The notes under the pieces were generated by a model that did not search any database, was not told where the DNA came from, and saw nothing but the letters and a program-made list of their open reading frames with translations. Both the position numbers and the translations under genes were made by a program. A DNA stretch of 64,000 nucleotides, taken from Bugula neritina. Lineage: Eukaryota > Animalia > Bryozoa. Of this stretch, positions 22,501-52,700 are shown piece after piece (positions within the stretch are counted from its first letter, which is position 1; each line of letters begins with the position of its first letter). Location: the NCBI GenBank assembly GCA_964035545.1, contig OZ037766.1:16048722-16112721 (forward strand). The letters run 5' to 3'.

Positions 22501-25500
22501 CCACAGTCTAGCTATGGAGCTCCACCATCTGGTCCTCCTAGTGGCATGGGGTTTGACTCTGGATATCCTGCCCAACCTGGTGGTTCTTATCCTCCAGCAC
22601 CAGGTGCTTTCCCACCCTCAGCAGGTATTCACTGCATTATCAGCATTTTATTATAATGACTAAATTATTAGTGCTAACGTGTCTCATCTGTCTACATTCA
22701 GGTCTACCACTTTTTTCTAAAAATACATTTTAATTAAAGATGGATCATATACTCTTTCTTTAAAAATACCAATATCTGTATATGTGTGATATTCTAATAC
22801 AATTATGAAAGACTAGGTGTGGTCTAAAGTACAAGAATTACTACATGGAATAATTCTGAGGATGGTTAGGCATGTCTGCTAGTATGAGTAGGAGTTTATC
22901 CTACTCCCTGTGTTAAAGTTCAAGTATTTAAAAATTGTATAAGTCTGCAGCTGAACGTACAGACTAAAGGAATGTTTCAAACATCCATTATGAAAGCTTG
23001 TAATATGATTTCTTTATTGAAAGATTTCTATGCACCCATTATATAAGCGCCTGACAATAAACATTTGAAGTTTTGTTCCCATCTTTAAAGAGTACAACTG
23101 AATCCGAAGGTTATTTTATCTATTATCTTCTAACACAAACATTGTCAAGACAAGAGGCACAATTAATTACATTTGGAATTAGGATTTTTCGCTTATTCAC
23201 GAGTGATGAGAGTTCTATCAGAGTTTTTTCTATCACTAAATTCCATCCAGATACTTCGCTGCCGGTTCTGGTTTGTGTAAACTCATGACATCACGAGGTA
23301 GCCAAGTCAGCCTCATGCAGCTATAGTATTTGTTTATTTAAATTAATCTGACATTGTTCTAATCTACATTCAATGAGCTAATACGTCTCATTAACAGTAG
23401 CTTTTGGCCAGATAAAACATGTACCTCTTTCTCCATAAACAATTTCGGAGAGCTCTGTTTATGCTAAGACGTATTGTGAAATGCTGGCATTGACGTGCGT
23501 TACAGTCGTCAGTATTTGAAAACTTTTAAAATGTAATCATTGGAAGAGCCAAAGAATACGCTGTCCATGCAAAGTTTTACCAAGCCACTTGATATTCAGA
23601 GTATGCTGTCTTGTATTGTGTTCCAATTTTTCTTGTTGGAGTAACAACTGTTTAGATGTTGTATTTTACTGCTGGCATGAATTGATGGTAAAAGTTGACG
23701 TTGAAAACATGTTTGGTTTGGACAGTTATGTAGTATTTAGGAGAAACTGCATAATTAAAATTGTTTGTGTTAAACAGAAAGATTCTTGTAGGTAATCAGC
23801 ATTTGCAAAAAACTGATAGTTATAGAATCATGCGATCCGATTCTTTCAACCTGTATTTTTTATTTCTTGGCCTTAGATCTTAAGCATTTGGTTATGCAGT
23901 GCTCTTTTGTTAATTGGGAGATTTGGTTAATATCAGATAAAAGAAACATAACATATATAAGAAAAGATAACTGTTGTTTAGAAATCAAAAGTGAAATTAG
24001 ATATTTCCAAAAAAGCTTAGATATGGTTGAATATAGTGCAGCATTTTGACAGTGTCAAGCAATACTTAATTTAAAATTTGTTGAGAAAATAGAATCTTCT
24101 TATAACCAATACAATAGAATTTTTCTCAGCTTTTTGATTATTTAGTATTATATTTGCATTGCACTTTGTAATTTGGTGTTATATGAAAACTTTTTTTAAT
24201 GACAGCCTATGCAAAGTTATAGAAACACATGTATAGAAAAATGAGCATAAACTATTGAGTTAAGCATAGAAAAATATATAACCTACTATTAAGGTTACCT
24301 ATAATATATGTGTTTCAAAGGTGGGCCTCCTGGTGGATATGGTGCACCTGGCAGTTACCAGCCACCACCAGCAGCCCCTGTAGCTTATCAACCACCACCA
24401 GTTCAGGGCGGCTACCAACAACAGCCACCCCCTCAAGGCGGTTACCAACAACCACCCCCTCAAGGCGGCTACCAACAGCCACCCCCTCAAGGCGGCTACC
24501 AACAACAGCCACCCCCTCAAGGCGGCTACCAACAACAGCCACCCCCTCAAGGCGGTTATCAACAACCACCACCAGTTCAAGGTCAACAACCAAGTGGAGG
24601 CTATCAACAGCCACCAAAGCAACAATCGGTACTTAAATTATTTTTGATTAGCATTTGAACATAAACATCGGAGTTATTCCCACATCAATTTGGCTGAAGT
24701 TCAACAGTTGCGTGTTTTCACACCCGTAGTTGAACATGGCAGCAAGATATTTTTAAAAATCAATTTTTGCTCATCTATAAAAGATGTCTCAGCTTCTGCT
24801 AGCACCAATATGTCTTCCTGTCATAAATTTGAAATTGTTTTTAGGGAACGGCAGCTCTGGCCAAGGACTTCTCCAAAATGGCTACCATGGGTACTGCTGA
24901 AAAGTTTCAGGGCACTATTAAGCCTGCCCATCCATTTAATGCTGAGCAAGACTGTGAGATCCTCCGTAAAGCAATGAAAGGAATGGGTATGAGATATTGT
25001 TGGGCCAGAATATTGTGTATCCCAAGTATTTGGAGTATGCCAGTGTATTTCTTGTTTTTATGATTTAAATCCTCTGATTATATAATAATTTAACATGTTT
25101 TGCTTAGCATCAGTTTCAATGAGATGTAAAAACATGATACTAATGCATATTCCCGAAATACCTTCCACATAGTAGCATTACTCATGATACTTGAAACTGA
25201 AAAAGCTGAAACATAGACACAGGTCCAACTTTTCACAGACTAGTATAAGATATTTTGCTTAAAATTAGTATATAGAATGTATTCACCATGTTATGTCATT
25301 TCTAGGCACTGATGAACAAGCTATCATTGATATTGTGAGAAACAGATCTAATGTTCAACGACAGCAAATAAAGAAGCTTTTTAAAACTATGTATGGCAAG
25401 GTAAGATGATCAGCTACAAGTTTGTAGTATTGCTAGAACTTGATGCAGTGTCGAAATACTTTTTGGTGCATGCTGGAATATTCTATGACCTATGTTATAA

Positions 25501-28500
25501 ACTCGTATAACTGATTTTCTGCCCTGTAACGCTAAACAATTCAAAATAATTTTTAAAAAAATGGATTACTATTATACTACAAGTACATTTAAAAAGCAGT
25601 GCTATGCTCAGCGTACTGCATGGTTGAACTGAGTGAAACTCAGACAAGCTGTAGCTCTGTTTAGCTATGGTAATACTTAGCATGTCTTTCATATGTTCAG
25701 TCTCTAACCACAGAATTGAAATTTTAAATATAAAATTGTGGGTTGGTTCAGTAGGCTAGACTTTTCCGTACTTCCCTAAAGGCGTAAGGTGATTTCAAAT
25801 TACGTAAAACCTAGAATGATATCCATAACGTGCTTCTAATTATTGTCTTGAGTCGGTGGCTAGACGGTTAGATATATAAGGAAGAGTAGAAGACATGGCA
25901 GAGGTCCAACAAGTCTTGCTGGTTGTAATCAATATTGTAATTGTAAACACATCCGACTATAATGAATGAAAATATTTCTGAAGTCACTGGAATATCATTA
26001 TACAAAGATTTAAATTAAATTAAAAACTGTCTTCTGAAGTTAAAAAGATGGCAGGCACCTTAACTACCTGTGCATCCATCTTATGGCAAGATTCCAAAAT
26101 ACTACAGCATTACAAGCTATTGTTGAAGTGGAGTGTTGCCAAAAATGAAATATATCAAGTTTTATTGAAATGATGCCACGTCATTTTCAAAAAATGCTGC
26201 TGTGTTACTTATTAATTTAAATTTATACAAGAATTAAATTAATTTTTTGGCATTAAGTCATATAAGATAATGAACAAATTTTTAGAAAACAAAAAATCGT
26301 AATACATGCCTGATAGATAGCAAGCATGGTCTGAACTAATCTAGACAAGGTGCAAGAATGTCTTCATTAAAGAGATTTAATCAGATTTTACTTTGAGCAT
26401 TTTGAAAGAGATGCGTAGCATTTTTACTCTCATTTGGTTTTCATTTGCCCTAACTACAACAAATCATTTCATACAATGTTCTGTTTACAATTGATTCAGG
26501 ATATTTAAAATATTCTCTTATCAAAATTGATGATCTCGTGACTATTGAAATTATGCAACAGGAAACTCATTTATAGTTGTTCTCATGTCTAGCCAATCGT
26601 TGCAATATTTAGTGCTAGGATGGGCTTATCTAGAGTTCCTCTCTTATATAATCATTGATGTCAAAATTAGTATTATATTAAAAAATAATAATATATGCAC
26701 ATCTCAGTAACTTTATTGTTTATTTTTTGTTCTTATCTGTTGCATGCCAACACATAAAACAGCTAATGTCATGGGTTTAGTTTTCGTTTTGGCCTGCCAA
26801 ATTTTAAATTTGTTTGTGAATAACAAAGTTGGACTTTCACACAGCCTTGATGGAATAGGTTCTTAGACCTTGCTAAATGTTGATATGCTCATTGGCTTGC
26901 AAATTACTTGCATGTATGAAAAACGTGGAAATAAGAGGTGGCATTTTGAAGCTCTTTATCTTGATGTTTAGGTGTATTATAATGCGTTTTAATTATTTTT
27001 ATGCAAAATCATAAGTTACAAGTTTTAAATATATACTTTTTTAAATTACAAATTCTAAACCACTTTTATAGCATCTTTTGACACATTTTTCAGACTTGAC
27101 AACTCACCCAGGGAAGCCTTGTCATACTAACCACAATAATGCATAGTCACATGTTATGGTGTATTTATTGTATACATGGTATTTATATTATTATGTAAAG
27201 TTTGTCAGGCATTATGTTATTTAGAATCGCAGACTCAGTGATTTGCATTGCAGACTGTTGTAAATTCCTTGAAAAAATTCCTGGCTGGGCAATGTTCACT
27301 ATCATGAGTCAAAAATATCTATGATACAGTTGATGGTAGCTGATGTCTGGATGTTTGTGGTCACAACTGGTCACTACATCTGCTGCAGCTCATTGACTGA
27401 CCACCTCAATTTAGCCTCCTGTAAATCAACACAAATTTAGCTGTATGCAGCCAGCAAATTGTAACTGCCCAGGTTTTTTAGTAAAACAATGTTATATCCA
27501 ACCTACAAGCTGCTGAATATGTTCAAAATTTCACCAATTTGACAATTTTTTGAACTGTTAAGATTATAGAGTTGTATTAGTAGACTGTCAAACATGGGGC
27601 ATATCTGAAAAATAATTTAATCTATCTGCATATAAAGCCGAAAATGAACATATGCATGTGCGTGTGTTTGCATATTTTCAAAGGATATCATGTGCAAATG
27701 TTTTTAAATAAATAAATTGAATGCAAATTTAACGTTTATTTTTATAGCTGCATGTACTTTCTCTCCACCTCTTTGCTATCTCACTATTGTTGCTTACTAA
27801 TAAAAATGTATTTTGTTGAGTTTTTCACCAGTTATTTTGTCTACAGTTTCTTTTGATCAGTTGTTGATTTTCTGTGCCGGAAGCAAAGGTCCAGTCCTCA
27901 GCTGAGAATGTTTTTACCACCTTTCTTTCACTCATGCACCCTATAATTTTAGGATCTGATTCGAGATCTGCAGGGAGAGCTTAGTGGGAACTTCAGGGAG
28001 ACGATAATGGCACTGTTTGAGGCTACCACCTATTACGACGCCTGGACTCTTAATCAAGCTATGGTGGTTCGTTTTGAAAATTTTAGAAGTTATATTTTCA
28101 TTTAGAAATACTTAAGCAACCAGACTTCATCATTAACTTTACATGTCAAATCTTTTCTGTTTTCCATTTAAGTATATTCCATATTAGTGTGTTGTTTAAA
28201 CATGAATAATTTGCATATAATAATTTTGCTTAGGGACTTGGCACAAAAGAAGCACCTCTGATTGAGATTTTATGTACAAGAACTAACGCTGAGATACTGG
28301 AGATTGTCAGATGTTATAAGCAACGTGAGTTTGTATCTGTAAAAATATCAGTGCTGGTGGTAAATGAAAAGATGGCGCTGAAGTTTGTTTAGCACATTAT
28401 GAGAAATAGGTTTAGACTTTGTTGTTTTTACTTGGTGATACTTGAAAATATGCGCTGAGAATCTATCTTAAAGTTGAGACTATTACTCGTCACATTTTAT

Positions 28501-31500: not shown

Positions 31501-34500
31501 TATTGTGGCTGCGTAGTGTCTCAGCTTTACCAGAATGGTAGGCTATGATAATAACATATGTGTACAAGATGCAATGTGATTGCTCTACATCCTATATTGG
31601 ATTTATGCCTCTTGTTTTGAAGTACAGGTTGAGCATACTGTTTGAAAAGCCACACAAATTAGTACTAGATAGTGAGCATCTCCGAACTTGTCAAACCTAC
31701 ACATACCTCTATAATAATAATGCATTACTAAAAAATTTAGGTTGCATACATTGGATTCTTCTATGTTAACTTCAGTATTGTTCAAGTGTGAGTGAGTGAG
31801 TTCACTATGGTGTTGGGTGTGCCTTGAGATAAATTCTTTAGTCTATCAAAAATGCAATCGTAGTTTAAAATCAGGGTTATGATTCTATATAAATTTTATA
31901 ATCTCTCAACGCCTGGGGTTATGGGGATGTTTTGATCTGCTTTGTCTATCTTCAAATACATTAATTACCTGTTGCTAGTTACAACTGAGATTAATTCTTT
32001 GAAGGAGATCATCTTAAACTGTGATAGTGGAATCAAATACCATGATGTAAAAGTATGATGTGTACAGGGTACATCCTCTAGAGTTATTGTGTTTCTATTT
32101 TGCTGCTGGTAGGCAAATGAAAGTGTAGATCCAATTTTATTTATGCCTGCATAAATACTTTACTCTTGAATCATAATGTAGTATAGAACATTTACCGGAG
32201 TGTTGTCGAACTTGGTGTTGTGAGTTTTTATAAAATCACTGTATTATATGGATGCCAATTTGATGACCTAAAAAATTGGTTTATATGTTACCATATCTGC
32301 TCTTCTCTAGGGCAATCGGGCCGAGTTGACACCCGCCCAGTGGAATGATGTCTTTACGAAAGGACCTGAGTCTGTTGTGGACAGAGCATTGGCCAAAAAG
32401 GAAGCTGAAGAACTTTACAGAGCTGGCGAGAAGAAGATTGGAACGGATGAGTCTGCATTTTTGAAGATAATGGCTCTGCGACATTTCTACCAGCTGAGAG
32501 CCACCTTTGAGGAATATGCTAGGGTAAGTTTTGTTGTGTTACAGCTAATCTAGTGTTCGTTGGTAAGGTTTTAAATTGAGAATCCAATAAATGCACCTCT
32601 CAAACTGCAAGCTAAGAGAGGTTTTACTGCTGCTTCCAGAAATAAAGATAGTTGTAGAATAATTTTTCAACTGATAAACTTTTTGTTTTAAAGAATTATC
32701 TTCTAGATTTGTAACTTTTGTGTATGCAGTTTGCATAAAGGAGACAACTTCTGTTATGACTTTAGGTTAGACTGTTTTAGAGCACAATTAGTTCCTCTCT
32801 GGAATGTTTCCATAGTAACTTGACTTATAATCTGAGTCAAGGTCTTTTGATGTGTTTTTTGTCTAAATGATTATTATTATAATCATTATTACGTCTGGCT
32901 GATGACATGGCAGTTAGCTGTTCACCAACTGAGATCTTGCGTGTCCTGTTGAAATTTTCCACGGGAAGTGGTTCATCATTTGCCCGGTGGTCATCAAACA
33001 AAAATGTATGAAGGCATTTCAGCTATGAAAGTTTTACGTACCGCTAATATTTTGACTTTACAGTAGTTATAAGATAGGCTTTCAATTGTTTTTACTTCAA
33101 TAATCTAATAAGGTCACCAGTTTAGAGATATGTTTAGTTACCTTAAGCCTTAATCTTGGCCATTACTGTAAGCAAGTAGCCGGAAGAGATTGTAGATTCT
33201 GAGACTTGAGTATGCCTGTCACAGACACCATATTTCAGATTGTCCTGACTTTTGAGTGTCAAATTTTTGCACACTTCCTTGCTTTACTTGACTTCTTTGA
33301 TTAGCATACTTATATGGTTTTTTCTGTGAAGTACATTGGTGAGTCATTGGGTAATTTTCCATTACAATATGAGTTAAGATATCATTTAGCAGACAGACCA
33401 ATCAGCGCACACTAATAATATGCAAAATAATCTTTTGTACTTCACTGTAAAATATTCACAACTCAGTTTGCTGATGTCTGCCATTGATTAAACCTCAATG
33501 TTATTTTGCTTTCCCATTTTAATACTCCACATACTACCAACATAATAATATTTCTACTAATATTCACAGTTAGCTGGGGTTTGCATAAAAATTATGTGGT
33601 CAGTTGCAATTTTGATGTAGTAAATACAATCAGTTCCAGAAATAAATAAGAAATATGTAAAATCAAGTACTCTTATTTACATTTATTTTTGTTAAATAAG
33701 TACTTTTGGGTTAATTTCAGTATATTTTTATAAATGAAAATAGAAATATATGAGACTGTAGTTCTTTTTATTATTGTTAATTTGCAAAGCAATAGCTGAA
33801 TACTGGATTCATAGATTAAAAATCAACAGACCGCAATTTTATAGTCCGGTTCACAAGTACCACGATTAAATAGCAGTTACATCATTAGTTTCCAGTTGAT
33901 TGTATTTCACAATTATTAGGAAAATAATATTAAATGCATACATTTACAGGAATTTGACTGCTTGTTGCCAACAAATTCCAGCTGGGTTCATAATTTGTTA
34001 TGAAAAATTGAGAAAGATTTCACGGAAACAACACAACACGTAAGGCATGTCATCACTGATTTGGCATTGTGGCAGCTATCTCGCCCTACTTTCTATTCTC
34101 TAAATTTGATATAATTGATTTTCTGTCAACAAAATTATGAGGATAAGAAATCTGGGATTTATTTTCAGCAAGTAAACATCAAACTGTGAATTCAGGAGTG
34201 GCTAGCTGATGTGGCTGCCGAGCCCTGGCACTGTGTAGTAATTTATAGATTAATTAATGCAATAATCTGTACATGGATCAGTCAGTGAGAGCTTACATTT
34301 TAATAGCAGTTATCAGATCTATATAGGTCATTCACAGAAAATATACACACGTTAGTTTTGGGCTAATTAATTGTGCTGGTCGGTGTACATCTGCGTAGCC
34401 TTTGTCTCAAAGCTACTAATTGAGGTCTTAAATGATACTTACGTCTTTGTCTTAGTTAGGTGTAGAAAATGTAGGCTTTTACTTTAGCTTGGGCTTAGAG

Positions 34501-37500
34501 CTTTATATTTCAGTATAATTGAGTTATTCCAAAGACAGTAACCTACAGTGCTACAAATACCAGTTTTAAAAGAAAATCTACACTTTATGTCTGCAATATG
34601 GAATCAATGGGGATGTATTACAGTAGCAATAGATAATACTGAGGCTGTCCTAGCTGCCCTAGAGATATTTACCGAAATTTCAGAAAATATCTCCTCGTTT
34701 AATTATTCTTAAAATAGTGCGGTGTTGGTGTGTGCATGGAGCAGAAGTATTTTCTTGTAGGAGTTATAAGGAGTGTTCAACTTTGGATACTTTCATCTGT
34801 TAAATCCACAAAGATACGACTCGAAGTATTTTTGAGACATGTATTTCAGCCAGTATTTTCAAAATGTCAAGCTCAGTGCCCATCTCAACACTTAAAAACG
34901 GACTCCACCGTTAGTCTGATATCTTGTGGTTTGATATGAGGCCCTACAAGATGAATATCTGTAGCAGGGTATCACAAAGAAGTTATAATGCTTGTTATAT
35001 TGGCTCAATGTTGCAGCAATATTCTTTTTACCAGGGAAAAGTTTTGGCTTTAGATCTTGGAGGCAGCAACCAACAAGCCTTAAAGCTTCAATTTTCAAGA
35101 AATTATTTTAAAAAATGTGAATTTAACAGGTTTTGGCTATTGAATCGGAGGTTATGAAATACTAAATGTACTCATTACTATTATTAGTTTATGTCAACAG
35201 CAAAAGGCTAGACCTAGCTGATCATCCACCTCTCCAGTCAGCTTAATACAAGTGGCAAGGTCATTAGTAAAATATTGCTGCCAACCCTTGAACCAGCAAG
35301 CTGTTACGTAATATATTTATAATAGAAGTACGCGGCTTACATGCTATGCAAGCATGGCCTTTTAACAGTGCAACGGTTGGCTGATTTTTATTAACGACGT
35401 CTGGTACAGACACCACCCAATACTGTTGTCAGTTGAGGATTTATGCTAAATAGATACCGGTATTATATTATACACATACTTTGTGGTTGCTAAGCAAATT
35501 GGCAGTGCATGGGCATAATAGCTTCACTGTCTTTGTATATTTATCACTGTCTATGTGAATTTAATTTATGAATGGAGGCAACTACTCAACGCTGGCCTAC
35601 AAATACTACATCTAACCACAAACACTCTACCCTATTATGATTGTGAGTAACACTTGAACTAATGTGCTACAAACAAGCCAGACTGTGCAGAATCCATTGT
35701 CTGATTAGTGCAACATGTTGCTTACTATGCAACACCGGGTAAAATCTGGAGCTTATCTAGCTTCCTCACAATGTTACATTTAGGATGTTGTTTCTCAAAT
35801 GTATTGTAAGGAGTTTTGGAATGATCAAGATTCAACAGGTTAAATTATGTCTGCAAATAATGTATATTATCTCAGATGAAAACATTTCTTGAGTACACTA
35901 TTGCCAGAGAATGTGAGAAAATTAGATAAATATGAAAACAGTAAACCGTGTATTGAGATTTTAAACTCAAAACAAAAGTGCACCATTTCATAATTATTCA
36001 CATCAGGGAGACAAAATTAGCATGTTTATCAAATTATCCTGAAAAGTATTTTCACACAAATCCAGTTATCAAAAAAATCATAACATTCTCCTACTTACTG
36101 TTCTTGACACTGTACAAAATTGTATCACTTCAAGTGAAAAAATTTAGAATATGGTTTTATTCAAAATGTATATTGTAGGCATTGGCATTGCTATTCTACT
36201 GGAGGTGTGCACCTTGTAGACTATTATTCTATAGCAGTGTGTAGTATAGGCGGTATGCCTTATAAGGCATGTAATTTTTTTCTTGGTCTCTCACACCAAA
36301 GGTCATCTTTCTTCATCGGCGAGCTCTCACAATAAATAAAAGCTTAGCCAGCTGCAGTGAGGCAATTGCTTCACTTGAATGAAAAACAGGATGAGATTAT
36401 TCCCATTCAACTTTGCACCAAATGGTTTCTTGAAACCGCCATCAGAGTCACTGAGGACAAGTACACGGCCGAAAATACTATCAAAACACTGGCATCAATG
36501 CTTGTGCTTTCCAATAAGAAAGCCATAGTTGAATTATTCAATCTATTCCGCCATGCTGATTCAACAAGGGTGGCACTGTAATGTCGAGATATAACTGAAC
36601 CATCATCTGTATGGCTGTCGGCCATTGCATTAATTTTTGGCAAATCTACTTGAAGTCCATCAGATGTTTCATTGTTGAAGCTTTCACTATATCTACCTTG
36701 AACAGGAAAGACCATTTCACCGAATGGAAGTTGCTGCCGTTGGATGTCTAGCAAGTGACTACTTACTCCATCTAAAATTAGAACAGTATGAATGAAACGG
36801 GATGTTCCGGTTTATCAAATCAATTCGTATTTCAACTTATTGGGGATGTAATGTTAGTCGCTTATAGTTAGAGTCAATGGTCACACTTCGGTGAACACAT
36901 GCTGGAAAATTAGGCGAGCTAGATTTCACAATTTCCGGTACAAGGTAATTTATTGAAATGAACAGTACCAAGTTATCAGTACGACAAAGTGTTCTTGAGA
37001 ATGTTTATGTGTCCTAGTAATGTTCGTAATTCTACTACTTAAGAATAAGTTTGGTTCTTTAGCCTTAGGTGCATGCTTGTTAGCTCATAACTATAAACTA
37101 GTATAGTTACCAAAGGTACGCGTTATACAATAGGAATAAATGCTATAATCTGAATACCATCGACACTTGAGCATCACACAACTGACATTAATGACTAATA
37201 AGTATAACTATATTATTAATTGTATAACTATAAGTATTCATGCTGGTGGTGGTTAAAGTGAAAATGATGATTTAACTTATCTACTAACATTACGAGTACC
37301 TTAAACTTAGTGCACGAGCAATTTATGCATCAGTTGCACTCGCAGCCCTTAGTCCTAGATGATAACTTATAAGTATAAGTGATCATTTAAATTATATTCA
37401 AACTGAAATTAAACTCAATAGTCGATATAAAATTAAATAAATATAAATAAATATTCAATGTATACAACATTAAATTTAATAATGCATTACTACTGATATT

Positions 37501-40500
37501 AATTTTAGAGCATTACATTTACAGCTTGGTGATTTGTATTTAGTTTTAGTGTGTGCAAATCGAAATTAGTAACTAAATTGAAAACTTAAAAAATAAAATA
37601 TAGATTATATAAATATAAATATATAATAATGCAACAACTTTCGAGTAAAAGTAAACTGTAAAAATAAAAAAGCTATCAGCTATGCCCATGGAACCCGAAC
37701 TGAAAGGTTTACTTTCAGTTTAATATTAAATTTACTTACATGCCATACACATTATCCAAGCAAGCTGGCATACATTTTTAGTCAAACTCCGTGTTGTGTG
37801 CATAGTAAAGCTGGTGGTTGAATATACTTAGATTAGGTGAAAGCTATAAAGGCAGCAAGTAATTCACCAAGTGTGATCCTCTTTCTCCGCACGAAAGCAA
37901 ACTACTACTGCCAAAGAAGCAATATTTAAAAGTAGGCTTGCGCAGTCTTAATATAAGCTCGTCTGCAGGCGAACTTTTAAACTCACGTGGCTAGAATGCG
38001 TAGTTTCAATTCGTCAAGCTACATTTGAGACCGCCCACAAAGCCACCTACACGCTTGACTACCCAAAGTTAATATAATATTATATTCCATTCATGAATAT
38101 TCTCTGCCCGTAGTCAACCGTTATGAAAGTCTTCCCTTCCCTTATTTGATACTCAGACTGGTATAAAAACCTGCTCTGTAGACCATATCAAACAAATGCT
38201 GGCTGTGCTTTGCAGGTCTAGTTTATCTAAGCTTTTGTTTATATTACCAGTGTAAATTACTAGTCTATTTTAACTTTTTTAAAGTAGCCTCGACAGCTAC
38301 GACAAATATTATATAATTTATAGATAAAACTAAAGCTTATAGGCTAAATATTGCGGTATATTTTATTTAGTATAAAATATATTTTTCTTACATATAGGAT
38401 CTTTGGTCAAATGTTCTGTATTATTGTATTGTATTATGTTTGTAAAAAAAATTTTAATGAGTTTCTGTACACCTAGCATCATTTCGGGCACTAGGACATA
38501 ATATGCAGAGTTAACTTGTACCAGTTATAACATTGCAGCATACATTAGCACAGCCAGCAATGGGGATATTTGTCTGAGACAAAAAAGAGAATAATTATAC
38601 TCATTAGTGTAAGACTATGTTGTTGTTGACTGGCTTATTTTTCTTACAAAATGCTAGGAACTCATTTCATCTGGAATTTTCCATTCCATTGCTACTGAAA
38701 CCCAACATAATACTGCTCTACAGAAGCACTACACTTTGATCAGGATTAAAAATGCTAGCACTACGATGCTGCTGATGGCTGCATTCTTCTAACAACTCAT
38801 TTGCTGCAGTCTCTTAATAATAAAAGTAGTTTTCTAATTAATTGGTTCTTAAGTATACTAATGCTAATTAGAGATCTGAAATTGAATAGGATTTTGTTGA
38901 TCTGAAAACTTTCAAATAAGGCTGTTGGAAAACCTGTATTCGAAAAATGCTGCAACATTGACTACGAGAATGTAACCTTGTGTTGTGTTGAAAGAGGAAG
39001 TGTGTTTTTGAAAGTGAGATCATCAGGGTCAGCTGTCACATATTTCGCTTCCTGTTGCATCCTCAGGTTGGTATAATTTTGGAATTGGAATTATAATCAA
39101 CTGACTGCTACGTGATTCTGGACAAAGTAACTGCATGTATTGTATAGCACATTTACTCTAAAATTAGTTACGTGATACATCATGGCAGATATTGAAAATG
39201 CTATAACCCTCCTACTTCCTCCTAAGACATAACATTTGCTACTACCAAAATGCAAGCCACTGAAAGAAATCTACTTCTTCACGGTCTGCTTCACACAGGG
39301 GTCCTCCCTGAATTCTTTGTTACAGTTGTCTGTGATGGCATCAACCTCATTGGGATTAGGGGCAGTTTTCATGATTTTGACTCTCTTCAACACAATATGT
39401 ACTGATTGTAATGCCTGCTTTTACTTATATTATTATTATTAGGCTGCTGATGCAATTTCTAAAATAAATGGGCTTAATTTTAATTTATTTGTCAGTCAGT
39501 CAGCCCTGACTGTTAGCACTTATCGCTTAGTCAGTTATGAAGAGAATCAGTTCATCCCTCTTTTAAACATGTCTGATGTGTGTTTTTGTCCCTGAAATGC
39601 CCTTCGAAAGCAGGTGGTGTGTAAATTATTAGCTCTTCAAATTTGCTTTTATAGAAGAAAGGTGGCCAATACATAATAATAAAAACATAGCAAGTGCAGC
39701 ACAATACTAATTTTAATAATGTGGAAAATTTTGGTTTTAGGAGTGTTTTTAGGTTACCTTGATAAACAACATATAGTTACATACTTAAGTTATAATTGAT
39801 CTCATTCTATTACATTCTCATTACATATTATTAGATGTCTGTAAATAAAAACATTATAGTACCATGCTATAGCATTACAAATATATTCATAGCATTTCCT
39901 CTCCAAGTTCAATAGACAAAATATGCGCCACCCTGATTTGACCCTTCTAACTAATGGTATTGGAATTCAGAATAGACTATGATCATAAACACCATCGCTT
40001 TTGTATCATGGGGGTAGCCTATTAGCCCATACGTTTTATCCTTCATCTAACATAGTGGAACTCGGTACAAGTTTTATTTTATGTAAATTAATGTAATAAT
40101 CTTTAAGATATTTTTTTAAAAACACTTGTGTTCTCATGAGTTTCTTTCAAAGATATAATCCCATGCCTCAAACCGAATGTATGCATGACAGATGTTAAAC
40201 GCTTATGCTGGTGCCAATAGACTGTCCAGGTACTTTTCTAAAAAAAAATACCTAAGAAGTCATGTTTTCACGAAGCCCAAACATATACATAAATTTGAAG
40301 ATCATAAAATTATTTAAATGTCTCAGTTACTGTAACCAAATGTCTTTTAATTTTGCCTGCAGTGCTGCCTATAAAACTGTGTACCCCGATGCTGCCGCTG
40401 TATTTTGTAGATCTCTCAGCGAGACATACTCAACTCTATAGGAAGGGAAATGTCTGGTGACCTTGAGTCAGGTTTCAAAGCTCTTGGTAAGCTCCTTATC

Positions 40501-43500: not shown

Positions 43501-45644
43501 AGGATTGTATCTGGCACAAGGCTACACCCTCTTGCCAGTAAAACGAAGTACACGTGGCAAGTTTCACCACTTTCCCAGTGCTTGGGTGGAATTCTTCTGC
43601 TAGATGTTGACATGGGATAAAAATTCCTAGTCAGCAAGGCACCATACTGCAGCAAATATAGCTTCTCAAAATATAACAAATACAAAATAAAATGGCTTAT
43701 TGTAAGGCTGTCGTGGAATGTTTTACTTTTCCTGATAATCTATTTCTTATACACAGAAGAGGCAAAGGTGGCATCGTCAAAATAATATTTGCATTTCTAC
43801 ATATTATTCTAGCTAGGTAGACCAGCATAGCTGTGTTTCTCTACTATATATCCTTTATGGGCTGTTTGAAGATACACCCATTAGTTGTCTGGTATAGTTT
43901 GCAGCATTACCAGCACTAAGACTATGTTGACACTGAGGCTATTTTTAGTACAAAAAGCTAAAAACTGAATCTTGGGTTATGTGTTTAATATAATAGTCTA
44001 TAGTTTGTTACATCTTAAGCCACCAACTAGAAGATTCCTGTTTATGGAAAGAAACTTTTCTTTATAGCAAACAAAATATACATTTTTTACAATTATATAT
44101 TAAAATATTCTAATTTCTAGAGCAACATATATACACCTATTCCATTAGCATATTCTATATGACATGTGATGATGTATACAAATTCTTTTTGTGTGGCATT
44201 GAATGTAAAATGCATAGTTGAATTTTCTGTATAGAAATAAGGGCAAATATTTTGGAACATTTACTTTTACAGCTTTTGTGTTGTGTTTTAGTGATGAGTG
44301 CAAGAAACAGACCAGAGTATTTTGCTGATAAGTTGTACAAGTCCATGAAGGGTGCCGGCACAAACGACTCCACACTGATTAGAATTGTCGTGTCAAGATC
44401 TGAGGTTAGCTTGTACAGCATGCATTAGCATTTTGTTATACTGCTATTCATATGACGGCAAGAAATTATTAGGCATATCCCTATAAGTGCAAACAATGTA
44501 GTTGCAGTGTAGTGTTACTCAAAGTATCTAAACAGGAATTGCATTGGTTAGCAAGAATTCTAATTATTGGGTGGATGGAATAAGGTACTAGCCAGACCAA
44601 GTCAGTCTGTTTAAACAAGAAGTTGTCTTCTCCCTACATCTCTGCGAATTGAACTTTTGTAGTCAAGTATGATTGCGATTATAATTTATTGATATTTCAG
44701 TAACCTGATGCCTGTGCATAGTTTAAGTGTGTAACATATGTCTGTTTGAAATGGGTTTTGTTTGGTGGATCTACAGCTAAGATAATAGAACTGTGACAGT
44801 TTATAAAAGTGCTCTGCTTAAACAACTTTGTGTAGCTTATGAAAGCATAATTGTGTGAGAAATGTAGAGTCTAACGGGTATGAAAGCTAAACCTCCAATA
44901 GTACATGTCTCTCTAACTAATACAAGCATCATGGTGGATGTGGGATATATTATTAGTACTACTCTTAATACATATAAAACAGCTGTTGCATGTTGTTGTG
45001 GCAACTTATTCAGCTGACAAACATGTAATGAAGCCCACAATGTATTTATTTATCACTCAGACTCTGGGGCATATTATGCTTTCATTGTATATAGATTATA
45101 TGTCAAACTTCTAGAGGCTTTATCAGCATTGAAATGATTCATGAGCTTAATTACCATTTGTATCACACATTATTTGTGGGGCTCTCCTGGATAATTGCAT
45201 CTTTAGATCTGTCTGATGGAGTTTGATTAGCTTTATGCATCATAACTCAAAAGCTAATTTGGGGACACAACTCCAAAAGAGTTTGAGCTCTCTTAGAAAA
45301 TGTCACTTATTTTCAGCTTGATGTAACATGATAATGACTGACATGCTATGCGATGTTATTGTAGTATACTACAAGCACCTGCTGTCAGTAATCACAATAG
45401 CAATCACATGATTCAGTTGGCGGAAATAACATTCTCGATGCCCTATTCAAATGTTTTGTCAACTAATGCCAACCCATAAGATAATATTAAATTAAACTTA
45501 TGCTATGATCTGTAGATTGACTTGAAGCAAATCAAGGCTGTATTCTTTGACAAATATAAGAAGACTTTGGCCAAGTTTATAGAGCAAGATACAAGTGGAG
45601 ATTATAAAAAAATGCTTGTTGGAATTGTGGGATACGATTGGTAA
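16546..45644 (+). CDS. Annexin (A7/A11-like, invertebrate annexin B type), long isoform ~658 aa; exons 16546-16638, 17055-17132, 18579-18768, 20065-20130, 22436-22624, 24321-24628, 24845-24986, 25306-25400, 27953-28066, 28234-28324, 29608-29687, 32311-32523, 40411-40486, 44292-44404, 45516-45644
   Basis: Phase-consistent 1977-nt ORF. A G/P/Y/Q-rich N-terminus is followed by four annexin repeats with endonexin motifs and acidic cap residues: [49 protein letters not shown]. It ends [14 protein letters not shown]. The exact start codon is less certain than the core. Confidence 0.92.
21304..21446 (+). CDS. Alternative terminal exon of the annexin locus (short, core-less isoform ~189 aa)
   Basis: Phase-1 acceptor (TGTAG). 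Reads [47 protein letters not shown] with a 30-bp tandem repeat x3. No strong phase-compatible donor; followed by T-rich UTR-like sequence with AATAAA at ~21605 and ~21704. Confidence 0.72.
21927..22191. mobile_element. MITE (PIF/Harbinger-like TIR)
   Basis: Imperfect ~27-bp TIR: TAGCTGGCACACACAAAGTCTATTTCA vs the reverse complement of TGAGATAGGCCTTGTATGTGCCAGCTA. Confidence 0.72.
24385..24575 (+). repeat. Coding minisatellite (27/30-bp units) encoding PPPQGGYQQ(Q) x~6 in the annexin N-terminus
   Basis: Repeated CCACCCCCTCAAGGCGG(C/T)TACCAACAACAG. Confidence 0.9.
29993..30172 (+). mobile_element. tRNA-derived SINE family, copy 2
   Basis: The head has A-box-like TGTTGAGTGGTTAGA and B-box-like GGTTCTAGTCC. 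The body matches the copy at 9316-9502. Confidence 0.72.
36407..37803 (-). CDS. Uncharacterised nested antisense gene, 142-aa protein with signal peptide and C-terminal hydrophobic anchor; exons 37803-37740 and 36771-36407
   Basis: ATG at 37803, perfect GTAAGT donor, TTTTAG acceptor and matching phase 1. Protein: [26 protein letters not shown]|[12 protein letters not shown]...NNETS...LNNST...[28 protein letters not shown]. Minus-strand AATAAA at 36161-36156. Confidence 0.72.
37900..38060 (-). promoter_or_regulatory. Probable promoter of the nested gene
   Basis: CpG-containing patch with TATA-like TATATTAA (~37955-37948, minus strand), E-box CACGTG (37984-37989) and GC box CCGCCC (~38031), directly upstream of the nested ATG. 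Confidence 0.45.
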
Positions 45645-46714: not shown

Positions 46715-49700
46715 TCACGGTAATGGCATATCTAGCTGACAAACATTACATCTACTTATTTTCTCTTTCCACGTGTCCCCTTTCAACACTTGACTCTGAC
46801 TTCGAGGATCCCAGTCTAAATCTTCCGACGCAATCAACCAAAAGCTGAACTTGTCTGAATAATAGTGACAAGTTCCGTGACTCCCACATTCGATATACGG
46901 GTGGGCTTGGAACCGCTCCAAACAGGATCCTGGGCTCATCAACTGCTGACCACCACCACCTCCACCACCTATGTGCTGATAGTAGAACAGACAGACGATC
47001 TTAAGAAGTATAAATAATATATGTACATATGTGAACAGCTGCTAATGTAGAAATTCAGTTTCTGAACAAGTAATTGCCCACATAGTTTTACCTCAGTAAA
47101 TACGTTATAATGAAAACTGCTGTCCTGGTTTTACAGTAAAACTTATCAAATGGGGCACTGGTCAAAAGAATTTATACTGCTTCACCAACATTGTTTAGCT
47201 AAAGAGTTTTCTTCAACAAATAGCTGAGAAATGACTAACCATAAGAAAAGAGAATCCAGTCCAGATGGAGTTCCAGCCAACAGGGCATAGAGGAGTATTT
47301 AGAGTTTGACTGTGGGTAGCAATCACCATTGATGGTACTTGGCATACAGAACATCTTGATATGTATGGATAAACCTGGAGTATATTACATAACATAAAGC
47401 TCAATAGCCCACAAGTTGTCACATGACCTGCATACATCAGCCATTAAATGAAAGCTAACCTCCATTGTAAAAAAATTAATTCACTAAAGAAAAACTGACT
47501 AAAAAGTTAGGTGGTTTTGGGCTGAGCATTGTTACCTAGAGGCACTCAACTTTTGCAAAATATTTTAATAGAAGGATGTAATATACATAGCAGAATTACA
47601 TAATACAATGTTCTATTAATAGCAGCAGTTTTTATATGCTGCATACTCACATCTCTACCAGAAACAGGCATCATGGTGACATCTAGACTTGTTGACAGCC
47701 AGTAACTGTTTCCTGTTCGACTAGCATACGTACATTTACCATTTATATTACAAAACATAAAAGGCATTGGATTAAATTCCTTCAAACAGCTGCTAGCAGT
47801 GCCTAAAATATTAACATAACAAATATAATATAATATATAAAATTAATAAATCTACAGATTATGATAAAATTTTCTAGAACCACTTTTTATGAGCACAGGG
47901 CAAAGCGCCATGGCTCACATATATTATGATTTTAATTTAAGATAAATTAAACTGATAGTGATAACCCATGCAAATGCAAGTTTACCCAAAGTTTCAATGA
48001 GCATGACAAACCTAGATCCTGAGCACTTGTTCGGCCATCATCTTCAGTATGGAGGAGACTGTATCCATCCCACAGTTTCACTGACCCTTGAGGACATGAG
48101 GGTATTCGGTCTGATTGGCTGTGTCTGGCAATAATATACGCTGATGGACCAGGCAAGCCAGCCATTCCGATCATCCCCTTCTCACCTGTTGGCCCAGGTA
48201 ACCCAATGCCTTCTGAAAATAATTATTATATCTTTTTGTCATACATTCATATTAATTCATATATTAAATGAGTCAGATTGCATGAAAATGTTTCCAAATA
48301 TGAAGCTAGACACAGCAGTTCAATGATCAATCAAAAAGGAGGTGATATTTTATTGAATTTTAAAAATGTGACTCAAGAGTTACCTTCTCCTTTTTCTCCA
48401 GTTTCACCTTTAGCTCCCCTAGAACCAGGCAGCCCATCCAATCCTGGAAATCCAGGTATACCAGTCATTCCCTTCTCACCCTTATGACCGTCTAAACCTG
48501 GTAAACCTATTAATCCAGGATATCCAATCTCCCCCTTTGATCCTCTATCTCCAAGCATTCCTTTTTCTCCTTGATCACCAGGAACGCCATTGAATCCTAA
48601 ATAATTAACGGAATTGCAAATCAGTATTGTAATTTTGTTCATCAATGTAGAAATTTATACATTAAGACATTACACAAAGTTAAGTTTCTTTGCAGAATTC
48701 TCCACCAATGCACTTTTGAAACTCATTTTTAAAAATATATTTGACTTTTGACAAGGAAAGTTTAATGTATAACAAGTCAGTGCATAAGTTATGATAACTC
48801 TAACAAGCTTTAATTTTCTAACAAGCCAATACTTTGCGGCAAATTAAGAGGACATAGCACATTTTTTGTAGTAGCCACGCACTATAGACTATAAACTGTG
48901 AAGAAGTAAGCAACTAACATCTGAATGGGAGTAATAATTTTATTTACCTGGTGGTCCAAGGTCTCCCTTACTTCCTTTTTGTCCATTGGATCCCGTAGCT
49001 CCGGGCTCACCCTTATCGCCAGGTAATCCAACACCTGGTGCACCAATATCTCCCTTAGAACCATCTGCTCCTGGAGCTCCTGGACTTCCTGGGTTACCAA
49101 TATCTCCTGCAGTGAAACAATCAGTAAATTATTAGATTATGATCCCTTAAATCTTATCATCTTATACTGGGCATATTGGTGATGAGAGTGTATTGGCTGA
49201 TGTAGATGCATGTACCTTTTTCACCATTTGTCCCATCTACTGCTATTCCTGGCTCTCCTTTTGCACCAGTTTCTCCTGGTGCACCTTTCATACCTGGAGC
49301 TCCATCTGAACCAACTTCTCCCTTAAGTCCTACATATAATAGCTTTGAGAATAAGATTACATAGAAAAGTAATACAGCTAATGAGATTATTGAAATACAC
49401 TATGCTCAGCCATTCTGCATAATTAATACTTTATATACAGAAAAACTATATAATAAAACAGTTTTATGATTCGTTCACTTAATGACAGAAACATAAAAAA
49501 TTGTGAGTATAGCGTATAACTAATCAGTTTCCAAAAGCAATGTAATTTGTTCCAGGCTTTCATCCACTCTTGAAAAATGCAAAATGAGAATTTTTCAAAC
49601 AGTTTTACGCAAAGCACAATACTTTCAAGGCACACTACTTACAGCAAGGATAATAGAATCATTTACCCAACTTTATTGTTCATAATTATATTAAAGTCTT

Positions 49701-52700
49701 CAAACATTTAACCCCTGATTTTGAATTCAAAAGGTAATAAAAATGACACACTTTCTTAAGTTGATAATTCATGAATGAAATATTTTGTACCTGATAGCAT
49801 AATGAGATTAAATACTACAATATATCACAACTGAATACTGTTTGCTCCTATAAATAACAAAACTTGATGCAGAGATGTTGCAGCTGTTAAAATATAAACC
49901 CGATATAATGCTCAAAATATCGTTGGAATATTTAAAAATAATTCACCAAATTACAGCTTCTTGTAGTCTATAAAGCTTAGAATAAGCAACTAATACAATA
50001 TACCAAAAACCAATAAATAGAAGGGTCGATGTTTTATCAATTTCATATCTGCAGTACACCAACTGGATGTAATATGAGTGAAAATTTAAGGTCAGTGGAC
50101 CGGTGAATCATTAGTAGTCTCAATGCAAAAAACCGTTGCTTGAAAGTTTGAACTGATTAATAGCTGACTCTGAGGCTAGGCTAGGGTGCAGAAGCCATGG
50201 CTAAATGTCAGTCACAGAGACTAAAAGTGACTGCAAGAGGCTAGCACCTCGAAACTGATCAACGACCACTTTTAATTTATTATTTTTATATTTACCAAGA
50301 AGTCCGGGTTCGCCTTTATCTCCTTTAATTGATTCACCTGGCTCTCCCTTTGTACCATTTTGACCAACAAGTCCTTCTAATAACATAGGTAAAGGTACAT
50401 AAATCTATATATAGTTTCATGAGTTTCTAGTTTCTTGTAAAATGAAAACAAGCAGCATCTATGACTTGCTATATCAGGCTTATACACTACTGCTATTAAT
50501 TAATAAACAAAGGAATGCACCTTCAACTTGAGTCAAGTTTTTAAACAAAACTCTAAGTTAAAAACTTGCACAATGATTGTCCTTACTGATGTTATTTTTG
50601 TGTTCTCAATTCTTGACAAATTCTACTTACTAAAACATATACATGATTTAGAAAAGAATCATATGTCAGCATAAGTTACCAATCAATGAGTGAACGCAGT
50701 TTAATTATAGCTTGCTTCTTTATATCACATTAGGGTATGTATATGGATTTCATGGTTTGAAGCATTTACCTGACCCTGGAGAACCTTGAAGACCTCTTGG
50801 GCCAGGATTGCCGACTTCACCCCTTTCACCCTTAGTTGCAAATCCTGGTACTCCGATATCTCCCCTTTCACCTTTGTCACCTGGAGTAATTGTCAAGAGC
50901 AACAATGGAAGCATATTGTGAGCATAATTATTATTTCTTATCAAAACCACCAGCAAATAAGTTATTCTAGTTAAAAGTTTTTAATACCTTTAAAAAAATG
51001 AGATTTATATGAACAATTGAATAGGATAAAGAAATACATTCGTTAGAAAAATAAACTCTAAGGAATGATGTTTTATAAATGCATTTCGCAAAATTAAATC
51101 AATTTTTAGATGCTATTTCACTTCCCATATTATAAAATATAGTTTTGCAATGTACAACACAACATTTTAGCTAGAACCAGGTGCTGTGATTTCTGATAAA
51201 CAATGTCATAGGTGGCTAATACTAGATGTTTACAACATATTTAGAATCTAACTCCACTTTACCAGGGAATCCCCGCAATCCATCTGCACCAGGTTCCCCC
51301 TTCTCTCCAACACGACCAGCTTTTCCTGGTGTACCGGGCACTCCATGATCTCCTGGCTCTCCTTTTTGACCTTCCACACCAGGTTCTCCATTATTTCCTG
51401 GAGTACCATCATCTCCTGTTTCACCTTTCATACCAGGTTCTCCTTTAAATCCACCAGCTCCAGGAACTCCCTAATCGTATTTTGTAATTATGTTAAATTT
51501 CCTTTTAATAAACATCTCACCTTAAAAGCCATTCTGTATAGAGTTGCAACTCAAAGCGATAATTCTAAAAACTCTGTAAATAGATATTATTGTTACTTGG
51601 AAATTCATTGATGAAAAGGTCACATTTAAAATCACCCGTTTAACCTCTGCATTGCTTTACAAAATGAGTTTTCATATACCCTAGCTCTATGTGCCCGTGC
51701 ATGTGTGTTTGTGTTTATATTTAATAGAAAATGCCACAAAGCAAAGAGCTCAAAATTACATTATAATTATGTGGTGAGAGTGCTAATGGTAAATTCATAT
51801 CTATAAGGAACAGCTGTATCAGAGTTTGTCCCTTCATCTGCACAAATTAACAGAGTTTTATGGCCCACAGCACTTCAAAGTAGAGAAAACTAACTTTTTC
51901 ACTAAAGCATAAAGATGCGTAAACCCAAACCAGAGAGCTCAAGTAACTCTAGGAGTCACGAGCCTTGCATAACGCTTCGCAGCTTGAGTTTACGACCATG
52001 GTTTATCACTATATCACTAGGTTATGGCAATATATATATAACTGTTAAGCTATTATAATAGCTAGCATGCTGAAAAAGAGGAAACATTTCTTACATCTTT
52101 TCCATCAACACCATCTTGGCCATCAATACCAGGCGCTCCTGGGTTACCATCATTTCCTGTCATTCCTTTTTCACCTGGCTCACCTTTAACTCCAGGTATA
52201 CCGTCCTCACCATCTCTCCCTATTCATTATCAGATAAAAACTATATGCATGATCAAATAAATAAAAGTTTGAAATAAAAGTTCCAAGTTAGTAACTAATG
52301 GCAGAAAATGTGCAGTTAATGCAAGAATAACTTATGTGTAAGCAGGGAGCAGTGGTAGTTTAGTGATTAGACCACTAGTGTAGTGCCAAGGTCATAGTTT
52401 CAAACCCCAGCCGGGCAGTTGGTAATGTTGTAATTGCTTTTGTACTCTAAACTAAAGATCTTAAAACTACTATGTTGCCCGCATGACCTTAGTGTATCTG
52501 AAAAACCCATCTTTGTGCAAATCGATTGTTCCCAAAACTTTTCACAGAACTAAATGCTTCAAATAAAAATGAGGCTTTGTAAGCAAATAAAGTAAGTAAA
52601 AATGAAAAAAAAACATCTGATAGGGTGAGCAAAAAAAGAAAACTCATCTACTAAAAACTGGATCAACAACTCCTAACCTGGTTCGCCTGGATTTCCAATT

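What the first reader, a model, noticed from the sequence alone, without database searches (positions are those of the whole stretch)
36407..37803. Hidden antisense gene nested in the largest annexin intron: orphan secreted/membrane-anchored 142-aa protein
Seen: the ORF track shows only a 115-aa fragment from a TTG start. A 64-nt upstream exon (ATG 37803, GTAAGT donor) splices in phase to a TTTTAG acceptor at 36771 and completes [26 protein letters not shown], which has a signal-peptide layout. A cysteine-free ectodomain with N-glycosylation sequons (NET, NNS/NST) follows, then a ~20-aa hydrophobic C-terminal segment and an 8-aa tail. The locus has its own promoter-like patch (37900-38060), a poly(A) signal (36161-36156) and the same intron hexamer motif seen at other 5' ends. 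Inference: a lineage-specific type I membrane or GPI-anchored glycoprotein. I recognise no family. It may explain why this intron is ~7.9 kb and could interfere with annexin transcription.
Basis: partly seen in the sequence, partly recalled or inferred. Interest (0 to 1): 0.8.

Follow-up and report, generated by a model that had tools for sequence, protein, structure and literature searches.

The report
Conserved small membrane-protein gene inside annexin intron
The predicted two-exon gene hidden on the opposite strand of an annexin intron is real, transcribed and under strong selection; it encodes a small membrane-anchored glycoprotein of an unnamed family found only in close animal relatives (apparently bryozoans), where it sits in the same intron each time.

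Summary
Exon 1 (37803-37740) joins exon 2 (36771-36410) exactly as predicted. Two independent intron-less contigs from a close relative (96% nucleotide identity) align to the window as those two blocks and encode the full 142-aa protein.

The gene is single-copy and lies wholly inside a 7,887-nt annexin intron (32524-40410), antisense to the annexin. It is not a species-level orphan. About 18 distinct lineages carry a homologue (59-98% identity) with a 28-residue invariant core. Synonymous sites are saturated between species, and dN/dS against the close relative is about 0.05.

In two other species with genomic contigs, the homologue sits antisense in the same annexin intron, with the same phase-1 intron in the signal peptide.

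An exhaustive profile search of 1.84 billion representatives found nothing outside the family. Pfam, PDB sequences, the ESM Atlas feature search and a fold search also gave nothing.

Best reading: a taxon-restricted type I single-pass membrane glycoprotein with a tiny cytoplasmic tail. Its membrane helix is conserved along one face, which suggests a packing partner. Its biochemical function is unknown.

The genome matches Bugula neritina by assembly size. Moderate interest.

The parts
37923..37930 (-). TATA-like TTTAAATA, 21-28 nt upstream of the 5' end of the related transcripts (inferred core promoter)
   Evidence: Sequence read. L003 and L004 both begin at window 37902. Function is inferred only.
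37804..37902 (-). 5' UTR (minimum extent, 99 nt), no upstream ATG seen
   Evidence: L003/L004 bases 1-99 align here, with 5 mismatches in 99.
37740..37803 (-). Exon 1 coding part: ATG plus 21 codons plus 1 base. It holds the n- and h-regions of the signal peptide.
   Evidence: Homologous exon 1 with the same phase-1 GTAAGT donor is present in L005 and L010. Full-length homologues have matching N-termini.
36772..37739 (-). Intron, 968 nt, GTAAGT...TTTTAG, phase 1
   Evidence: Absent from the intron-less contigs L003 and L004, which join 37740 directly to 36771.
36410..36771 (-). Exon 2 coding part: end of the signal peptide, conserved N-terminal motif, variable glycosylated linker, invariant core, membrane helix and short tail
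36407..36409 (-). Stop codon TGA
35974..36406 (-). 3' UTR (minimum extent). It contains the AATAAA at 36161-36156 that the related transcripts read through.
   Evidence: L003 aligns down to 35974 and L004 to 35983, neither with a poly(A) tail.
32524..40410 (+). Host intron of the annexin gene (7,887 nt), GTAAGT...TTGTAG
   Evidence: Flanking exons are conserved in L005 and L010.
32311..32523 (+). Annexin exon upstream of the host intron (first half of an annexin repeat)
   Evidence: PF00191 match over the cut-off at window 32401-32523. 85% identical to L010 over 72 aa. Translation.
40411..40486 (+). Annexin exon downstream of the host intron (second half of that repeat)
   Evidence: tblastx to L005, L010 and L011. 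Sequence and translation.

Best explanation
This is a genuine, independently transcribed two-exon protein-coding gene lying antisense inside an intron of an annexin gene.

Shown:
- Its mRNA is at least 0.97 kb and is spliced 37740|36771.
- It encodes 142 residues.
- The gene is single-copy and under strong purifying selection on the protein.
- It belongs to an unnamed family with no detectable relatives outside a tight group of species.
- It has kept both its own intron and its nested position in three deeply diverged species.

Inferred:
- The N-terminal hydrophobic stretch is a cleaved signal peptide.
- The roughly 85-residue Cys-free luminal or extracellular part is N-glycosylated at the two conserved sequons.
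- The C-terminal hydrophobic helix stays in the membrane as a type I anchor, with a 3-8-residue cytoplasmic tail that begins with an invariant Arg.

More speculative:
- The invariant juxtamembrane core, together with the single conserved face of the membrane helix (D114, F121, Y125, M132, R136), forms an interface with a conserved membrane partner or with itself. The protein would then act as a small accessory or assembly subunit rather than as an enzyme or a globular ligand.

The nesting itself is most likely a frozen genomic arrangement, not a regulatory device.
For: Splice and transcription:
- Two intron-less contigs from different sequencing runs align as two blocks that abut at the predicted junction and encode the full ORF.
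- Intron-less contigs of about 1.2 kb for other members recur in many runs and in JGI samples. Some start with adaptor remnants.

Selection:
- Against the close relative, exon 2 has 10 synonymous and 2 non-synonymous changes. dN/dS is 0.007/0.137, binomial p 1.2e-5.
- Against L005 and L010, pS is 0.77-0.94 (saturated). Over the 39-codon core segment pS is 0.75-1.04 and dN is 0.03-0.10.

Family:
- 20 database clusters with E down to 6e-69, 47 invariant columns, and a 28-residue invariant run.
- The gene is single-copy in its own genome by DNA and by protein search.

No outside relatives:
- The profile search of 1.84e9 representatives returned only the family's own cluster.
- Pfam, PDB sequences, the Atlas feature search and Foldseek against PDB gave nothing significant.

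Conserved nesting and gene structure.

Topology:
- Hydropathy peaks at residues 10-25 and 105-135.
- Sequons N55 (nearly invariant) and N100/N101-S-T (invariant).
- R136 is invariant after the helix.
- AF2 predicts a long helix over residues 81-141 with pLDDT 76-88 for 91-140.
- Conservation in residues 112-137 has its best periodicity at exactly 100 degrees, p 0.006.
Against: - No signal-peptide, GPI or topology predictor was available. Cleavage, glycosylation and membrane retention are inferences.
- The AF2 model is of low overall confidence (pLDDT 62.7, pTM 0.31).
- No partner, expression pattern or phenotype is known, so the 'accessory subunit' step rests only on conservation patterns.
- The transcript evidence comes from a relative that is 96% identical, not from this very genome.
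- The taxa of the other members are not labelled.
Confidence: 0.72

Rival explanations
1. Same gene, but the C-terminal hydrophobic segment is a GPI-attachment signal that is cut off, so the mature glycoprotein is lipid-anchored.
For: The hydrophobic stretch lies at the extreme C-terminus, with only 3-8 residues after it. Small residues (S, T, N, D) lie upstream as possible omega sites.
Against: - A hydrophilic tail follows the hydrophobic stretch, and its first Arg is invariant.
- Specific residues in the segment are invariant and lie on one helix face, with 100-degree periodicity, p 0.006. That is not expected of a discarded signal.
- The spacer between the small residues and the hydrophobic run is short.
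Confidence: 0.18
2. The N-terminal hydrophobic stretch is not cleaved. The protein would be a two-helix hairpin with a glycosylated luminal loop.
For: The N-terminal segment keeps a loosely conserved pattern (Cys and Leu positions) across members, and AF2 draws it as a long helix over residues 4-33.
Against: - The segment is far more variable than the rest of the protein.
- It has the n/h/c layout, with small residues at -3/-1 before the conserved mature N-terminus, in every full-length member.
- Its own dN is high against the close relative, with 3 non-synonymous and 0 synonymous changes.
Confidence: 0.07
3. The ORF is a chance open frame, a transposon fragment, or an untranslated antisense RNA.
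For: An open frame of this length is expected about 0.5 times per window by chance. There is no known domain.
Against: - It is single-copy in the genome.
- The protein is conserved while synonymous sites are saturated, and dN/dS is 0.05.
- Splicing is conserved and in frame in three species.
Confidence: 0.01
4. The nesting is functional. Transcription of the nested gene and of the annexin interfere with or are coordinated with each other, which would explain why the arrangement is kept.
For: Same intron, same antisense orientation, and the widest gap between detected annexin exons in three deeply diverged species.
Against: Nested genes are hard to relocate, so conservation of position is expected without any function. 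No expression data were available. No other conserved element was seen in the intron.
Confidence: 0.15

Closest known systems
Nested intronic genes of animals (a gene lying wholly within an intron of a host gene, often antisense)
   Same: The whole transcription unit (37902 to at most 35974) lies inside one host intron, on the opposite strand. It has its own 5' end and its own intron, and the position is conserved across species.
   Different: The nested gene belongs to an undescribed family. The host is an annexin. No functional link between host and guest is shown.
Small single-pass accessory subunits with a signal peptide, such as the FXYD regulators of Na,K-ATPase (comparison from general knowledge, by analogy only)
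   Same: Size (about 115 mature residues), type I layout, a short conserved extracellular motif next to the membrane, a membrane helix conserved on one face, and a basic residue at the cytoplasmic boundary.
   Different: No FXYD motif and no Pfam match. The cytoplasmic tail is almost absent. No sequence similarity and no partner known.
GPI-anchored small glycoproteins
   Same: Signal peptide, glycosylated Cys-free ectodomain, and a hydrophobic C-terminus.
   Different: A hydrophilic tail with an invariant Arg follows the hydrophobic run, and the run itself is conserved on one face.
SEA-domain autoproteolysis motif (G|SVVV), recalled from knowledge
   Same: The invariant core contains G-S-V-I-S, reminiscent of the cleavage motif.
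   Different: There is no SEA Pfam match. The ectodomain is too short, and it is predicted helical or disordered rather than an alpha/beta sandwich. Probably coincidence.

Membership tests
Nested antisense intronic protein-coding gene | The whole transcription unit lies inside one intron of a host gene, on the opposite strand | tested here: met
   The transcript blocks 37902-37740 and 36771-35974 lie inside annexin intron 32524-40410.
Nested antisense intronic protein-coding gene | Independent transcript with its own ends and splicing | tested here: met
   Intron-less contigs from two runs share the same 5' end. The 3' end is not defined, because no poly(A) tail was seen.
Protein-coding gene under selection | dN/dS well below 1 and the frame kept in relatives | tested here: met
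   dN/dS 0.05. The core is invariant while pS is saturated. The frame is intact in all 20 clusters.
Type I single-pass membrane glycoprotein | Cleavable N-terminal signal peptide | tested here: inconclusive
   An n/h/c layout and a hydropathy peak at residues 10-25 are present in all full-length members. No dedicated predictor was available.
Type I single-pass membrane glycoprotein | One hydrophobic helix of about 20 residues followed by a basic residue on the cytoplasmic side | tested here: met
   Kyte-Doolittle maximum 2.19 at residues 117-131, R136 invariant, AF2 helix 81-141.
Type I single-pass membrane glycoprotein | Conserved N-X-S/T sequons in the ectodomain | tested here: met
   N55 is nearly invariant and N100-N101-S-T is invariant. 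Actual glycosylation cannot be tested here.
GPI-anchored protein | C-terminal signal: omega site, spacer, and a hydrophobic end that is removed and therefore not position-specifically conserved | tested here: inconclusive
   The hydrophobic end is present, but a polar tail follows it and it shows one-face conservation. No GPI predictor was available.
Taxonomically restricted (lineage-specific) gene family | No detectable homologue outside the lineage | tested here: met
   The exhaustive profile search of 1.84e9 representatives returned only the family's own cluster. Pfam, PDB and Atlas gave nothing.
Species-level orphan gene | No homologue in any other species | tested here: not met
   20 clusters at 61-98% identity, about 18 lineages at a 95% cut.
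FXYD family (PF02038) | FXYD motif and a profile match | tested here: not met
   No Pfam match at E up to 1 for any of 18 members.
Multicopy transposon fragment | Many copies in the genome | tested here: not met
   One place only, by both DNA and protein search of the 216-Mb assembly.
Annexin (host gene, PF00191) | Annexin repeats over the Pfam cut-off on the + strand, flanking the locus | tested here: met
   Five matches over the cut-off, at window 25281-25400, 28219-28326, 32401-32523, 44318-44419 and 45513-45626.

The most novel reading that the evidence does not exclude
The family is a newly evolved, lineage-restricted (apparently bryozoan) obligate subunit of a conserved membrane machine. 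Its invariant 28-residue juxtamembrane module and one-face-conserved transmembrane helix would dock onto a channel, pump or receptor, as FXYD or KCNE proteins do. Its antisense nesting in the annexin gene would couple the expression of the two.
Probability: 0.2. Interest if true: 0.55.

Novelty: new member of a known kind. Interest (0 to 1): 0.38.

Why it matters
The finding shows that a gene model read from raw sequence alone can be right to the base. It also adds an undescribed, strongly constrained small membrane-protein family to a phylum with very little functional annotation.

The contrast is unusual for a taxon-restricted gene: a 28-residue core is invariant while synonymous sites are saturated, and there is no relative among 1.84 billion cluster representatives (standing for about 15 billion proteins). 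This marks the protein as doing something specific and important in these animals, which makes it a reasonable target for localisation and knock-down work.

The conserved guest-in-annexin arrangement is also a clean microsynteny marker: collagen IV, then the annexin, with the nested gene in its intron.

Tried and rejected
Searches that gave nothing:
- Pfam on exon 2 and on 18 members: only DUF4781 at E 0.03-0.045, below the cut-off.
- PDB sequence profile search: best E 1.4, a membrane-helix match to GPR155, rejected as noise.
- ESM Atlas feature search: top score 0.79, within the range of shuffled proteins.
- Foldseek against PDB with the AF2 model: no match. The model is mostly one long helix plus disorder, so further fold searches were not run.

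Literature and sample look-ups:
- Searches for nested genes in bryozoan annexins and for the run, sample and JGI identifiers of the homologues found nothing. The taxa of the other members therefore stay unlabelled.
- The 'BRYA16' sample name could not be traced in PMC5041132.

Readings rejected:
- Transposon: the sequence is single-copy.
- DNA-level conservation, such as an antisense regulatory element: rejected because synonymous sites are saturated.

Step left out:
- Exon 2 was searched by reference (window:36410-36769:-) and exon 1 was only translated.
- All whole-protein work used the natural intron-less contig L003:100-528, which differs at 5 of 142 residues.
- For the same reason, I could not look up whether the exact 142-aa product is already in the protein collection.
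Full report
**What is in the sequence**

- ATG at 37803-37801, followed by 21 codons plus one base, ending at 37740. A GTAAGT donor follows.
- A TTTTAG acceptor with AG at 36773-36772. Exon 2 starts at 36771 and the split codon is TAT.
- The frame stays open to a TGA at 36409-36407.
- The mechanical ORF list shows only the 115-aa TTG fragment 36407-36754.
- The window is AT-rich (about 33% G+C) and stop codons make up 7% of all codons. About 0.55 open frames of this length (134 codons stop to stop) are expected in the window by chance. ORF length by itself proves nothing.

**Proof of the gene model**

A word-based protein search with exon 2, given by reference, returned 20 clusters at 61-98% identity with E down to 6e-69. 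None has a name or a Pfam domain, and none comes from NCBI or UniRef.

The 98% hit, P0001, is encoded on two roughly 0.97-kb contigs assembled from two different sequencing runs.
- Both contigs align to the window as two blocks: bases 1-163 to 37902-37740, and bases 164-969 to 36771-35974, at 95-96.5% identity.
- From the ATG equivalent to 37803 they encode an uninterrupted 142-aa protein. It differs from the window's two exon translations at five residues.
- Full-length members from other species have N-termini of the same kind, and the gene-caller start of P0001 (M-A-Y-G-V-S-S) spans the junction.

**Selection**

Against the close relative:
- Exon 2 has 10 synonymous and 2 non-synonymous differences (dS 0.137, dN 0.007, ratio 0.05). 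The binomial probability under neutrality is 1.2e-5.
- Exon 1, the n-region of the signal peptide, has three non-synonymous changes and no synonymous ones, as expected of a loosely constrained leader.

Against the two homologues for which genomic contigs exist (L005, L010):
- Synonymous sites are saturated (pS 0.77-0.94).
- The 39-codon segment from L-P-K-I to N-N-S-T has dN of only 0.03-0.10. Nearly every synonymous site differs between the window and either contig (pS 0.97-1.04), against 0.75 between the two contigs.
- Conservation therefore acts on the protein, not on the DNA.

Across 24 distinct mature sequences, a run of 28 residues (T76 to T103, apart from one L/I column) is invariant. 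So are D30, R33-G39, F43, L65-I68, E109, D114, F121, Y125 and R136.

**Copy number and genomic setting**

The locus is single-copy in its 216-Mb assembly, by both DNA and protein search.

Annexin repeats (PF00191, over the cut-off) lie on the + strand at window 25.3, 28.2, 32.4, 44.3 and 45.5 kb. The exons flanking the locus are 32311-32523 (ending ...E-E-Y-A-R, GTAAGT donor) and 40411-40486 (I-S-Q-R-D-I-L..., preceded by TTGTAG). The host intron is therefore 32524-40410, 7,887 nt. It is the largest of the gaps between the annexin exons detected. The nested unit occupies 37902 down to at most 35974.

**The nesting is conserved**

tblastx of a 33-kb contig (L005, P0013) and a 21-kb contig (L010, P0014) against the window shows the same order of conserved blocks:
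- collagen IV NC1 exons;
- the last annexin exons;
- the 40.4-kb annexin exon;
- the small gene on the opposite strand;
- the 32.4-kb annexin exon;
- the remaining annexin exons.

A shorter contig of the L010 species shows the same (L011). The host intron measures 4.2 kb in L005 and 6.4 kb in L010. In both it is again the widest gap between detected annexin exons.

In both species the small gene has an exon 1 of 64-67 nt that ends in a phase-1 GTAAGT donor inside the signal peptide, and an exon 2 that begins just before the conserved motif.

**No relatives outside the family**

- A profile built from 18 members was scored against 1.84 billion representatives (50% clusters of about 15 billion proteins). 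It found exactly one protein, the representative of the family itself.
- Pfam, PDB sequences, the ESM Atlas feature search and Foldseek against PDB gave nothing significant.
- At a 95% identity cut there are about 18 lineages. The lowest pairwise identity is 59%.

**Organism**

The assembly size and sequence count (216,009,554 bases, 321 sequences) match the published Bugula neritina assembly tzBugNeri2.1: 216.00 Mb, 320 scaffolds plus the mitochondrion (PMC11480708). This identification rests on matching figures, not on a sequence comparison.

That paper says the Ensembl annotation was built mainly from transcript alignments, so a model of this gene may already exist there. I could not check. 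The other members come from unlabelled transcriptome, metagenome and metatranscriptome assemblies. Shared microsynteny argues that at least L005 and L010 are related animals, but their taxa could not be established.

**What the protein looks like**

- Hydropathy has two peaks: residues 10-25 (leader) and 105-135, with a maximum of 2.19 at 117-131.
- The mature part has no Cys in this species and is acidic (11 D+E against 6 K+R).
- It carries N-E-T at residue 55 and N-N-S-T at 100-103. Both sequons are conserved.
- AlphaFold2 run with the family alignment gives a low-confidence model (pLDDT 62.7): a leader helix, a disordered stretch over 29-65, a short helix over 66-73, and one long helix over 81-141 with pLDDT 76-88 for residues 91-140.
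- Within residues 112-137, conservation is periodic with its best angle at exactly 100 degrees. The moment is 0.337 against 0.137 +/- 0.07 for shuffles, p 0.006.
- D114, F121, Y125, M132 and R136 lie on one stripe of the helix. That pattern is what a helix-helix packing surface in the membrane looks like. It is hard to reconcile with a GPI signal that is thrown away.

**Mechanism proposed, and how far it is shown**

- Shown: a spliced, conserved, selected, nested gene.
- Inferred with fair confidence: entry into the secretory pathway, leader cleavage around residues 23-26, N-glycosylation, and type I anchoring with a minimal tail.
- Speculative (about 0.2-0.3): the invariant juxtamembrane module and the helix face bind a conserved membrane partner, or mediate self-assembly, in the manner of small accessory subunits.
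- The G-S-V-I-S in the core recalls the SEA autoproteolysis motif. Neither size, predicted fold nor Pfam supports this reading.

- The AATAAA at 36161-36156 is read through by both related transcripts, which continue about 180 nt without a tail.
- The promoter patch is only consistent with the data: both transcripts share a 5' end at 37902, a TATA-like TTTAAATA lies 21-28 nt upstream, and A is at -3 of the ATG.
- Interference with annexin transcription is untested.

The window's exons were never joined. Whole-protein analyses used the natural intron-less contig by reference.

**Verdict**

This is a new, tightly conserved, taxon-restricted small membrane-glycoprotein family in a conserved nested position. 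It is a sound, moderately interesting annotation result, not a new kind of system.

Noticed in passing
window 46730-56100 (-), and about 57600-62450: A collagen IV gene lies on the minus strand. Its NC1/C4 exons are at 46730-46978, 47234-47380, 47642-47804 and 47993-48205, with Gly-X-Y exons upstream. Its 3' end converges on the annexin 3' end about 1.1 kb away, and the order is the same in L005. Gly-X-Y-like frames and tblastx hits beyond 57.6 kb suggest a second collagen gene, possibly head-to-head.
   Followed up: partly
window 24308-24658 (+): An annexin N-terminal exon encodes a Pro/Gln/Gly/Tyr-rich repeat (G-G-Y-Q-Q-P-P-P-Q units), like the long N-termini of annexin A7/A11-type proteins.
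   Followed up: no
L003, L004 (Logan contigs) versus window 35974-37902: The closest transcripts differ from the window by about 4% in nucleotides (dS 0.137). That is more than expected within one population, and possibly reflects a sibling lineage of the Bugula neritina species complex.
   Followed up: no
L016-L025, L026-L030: Transcripts of two other family members (about 1.2 kb) recur in many JGI samples and sequencing runs. This suggests the animals, perhaps as planktonic larvae, and this mRNA are abundant in environmental samples. Several contigs begin with sequencing-adaptor remnants.
   Followed up: no
L014 2815-3441: P0003 (208 aa) and P0006 (171 aa) are longer than the family norm because the gene caller ran through flanking sequence. 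The stored locus L014 did not translate to the query as recorded.
   Followed up: no
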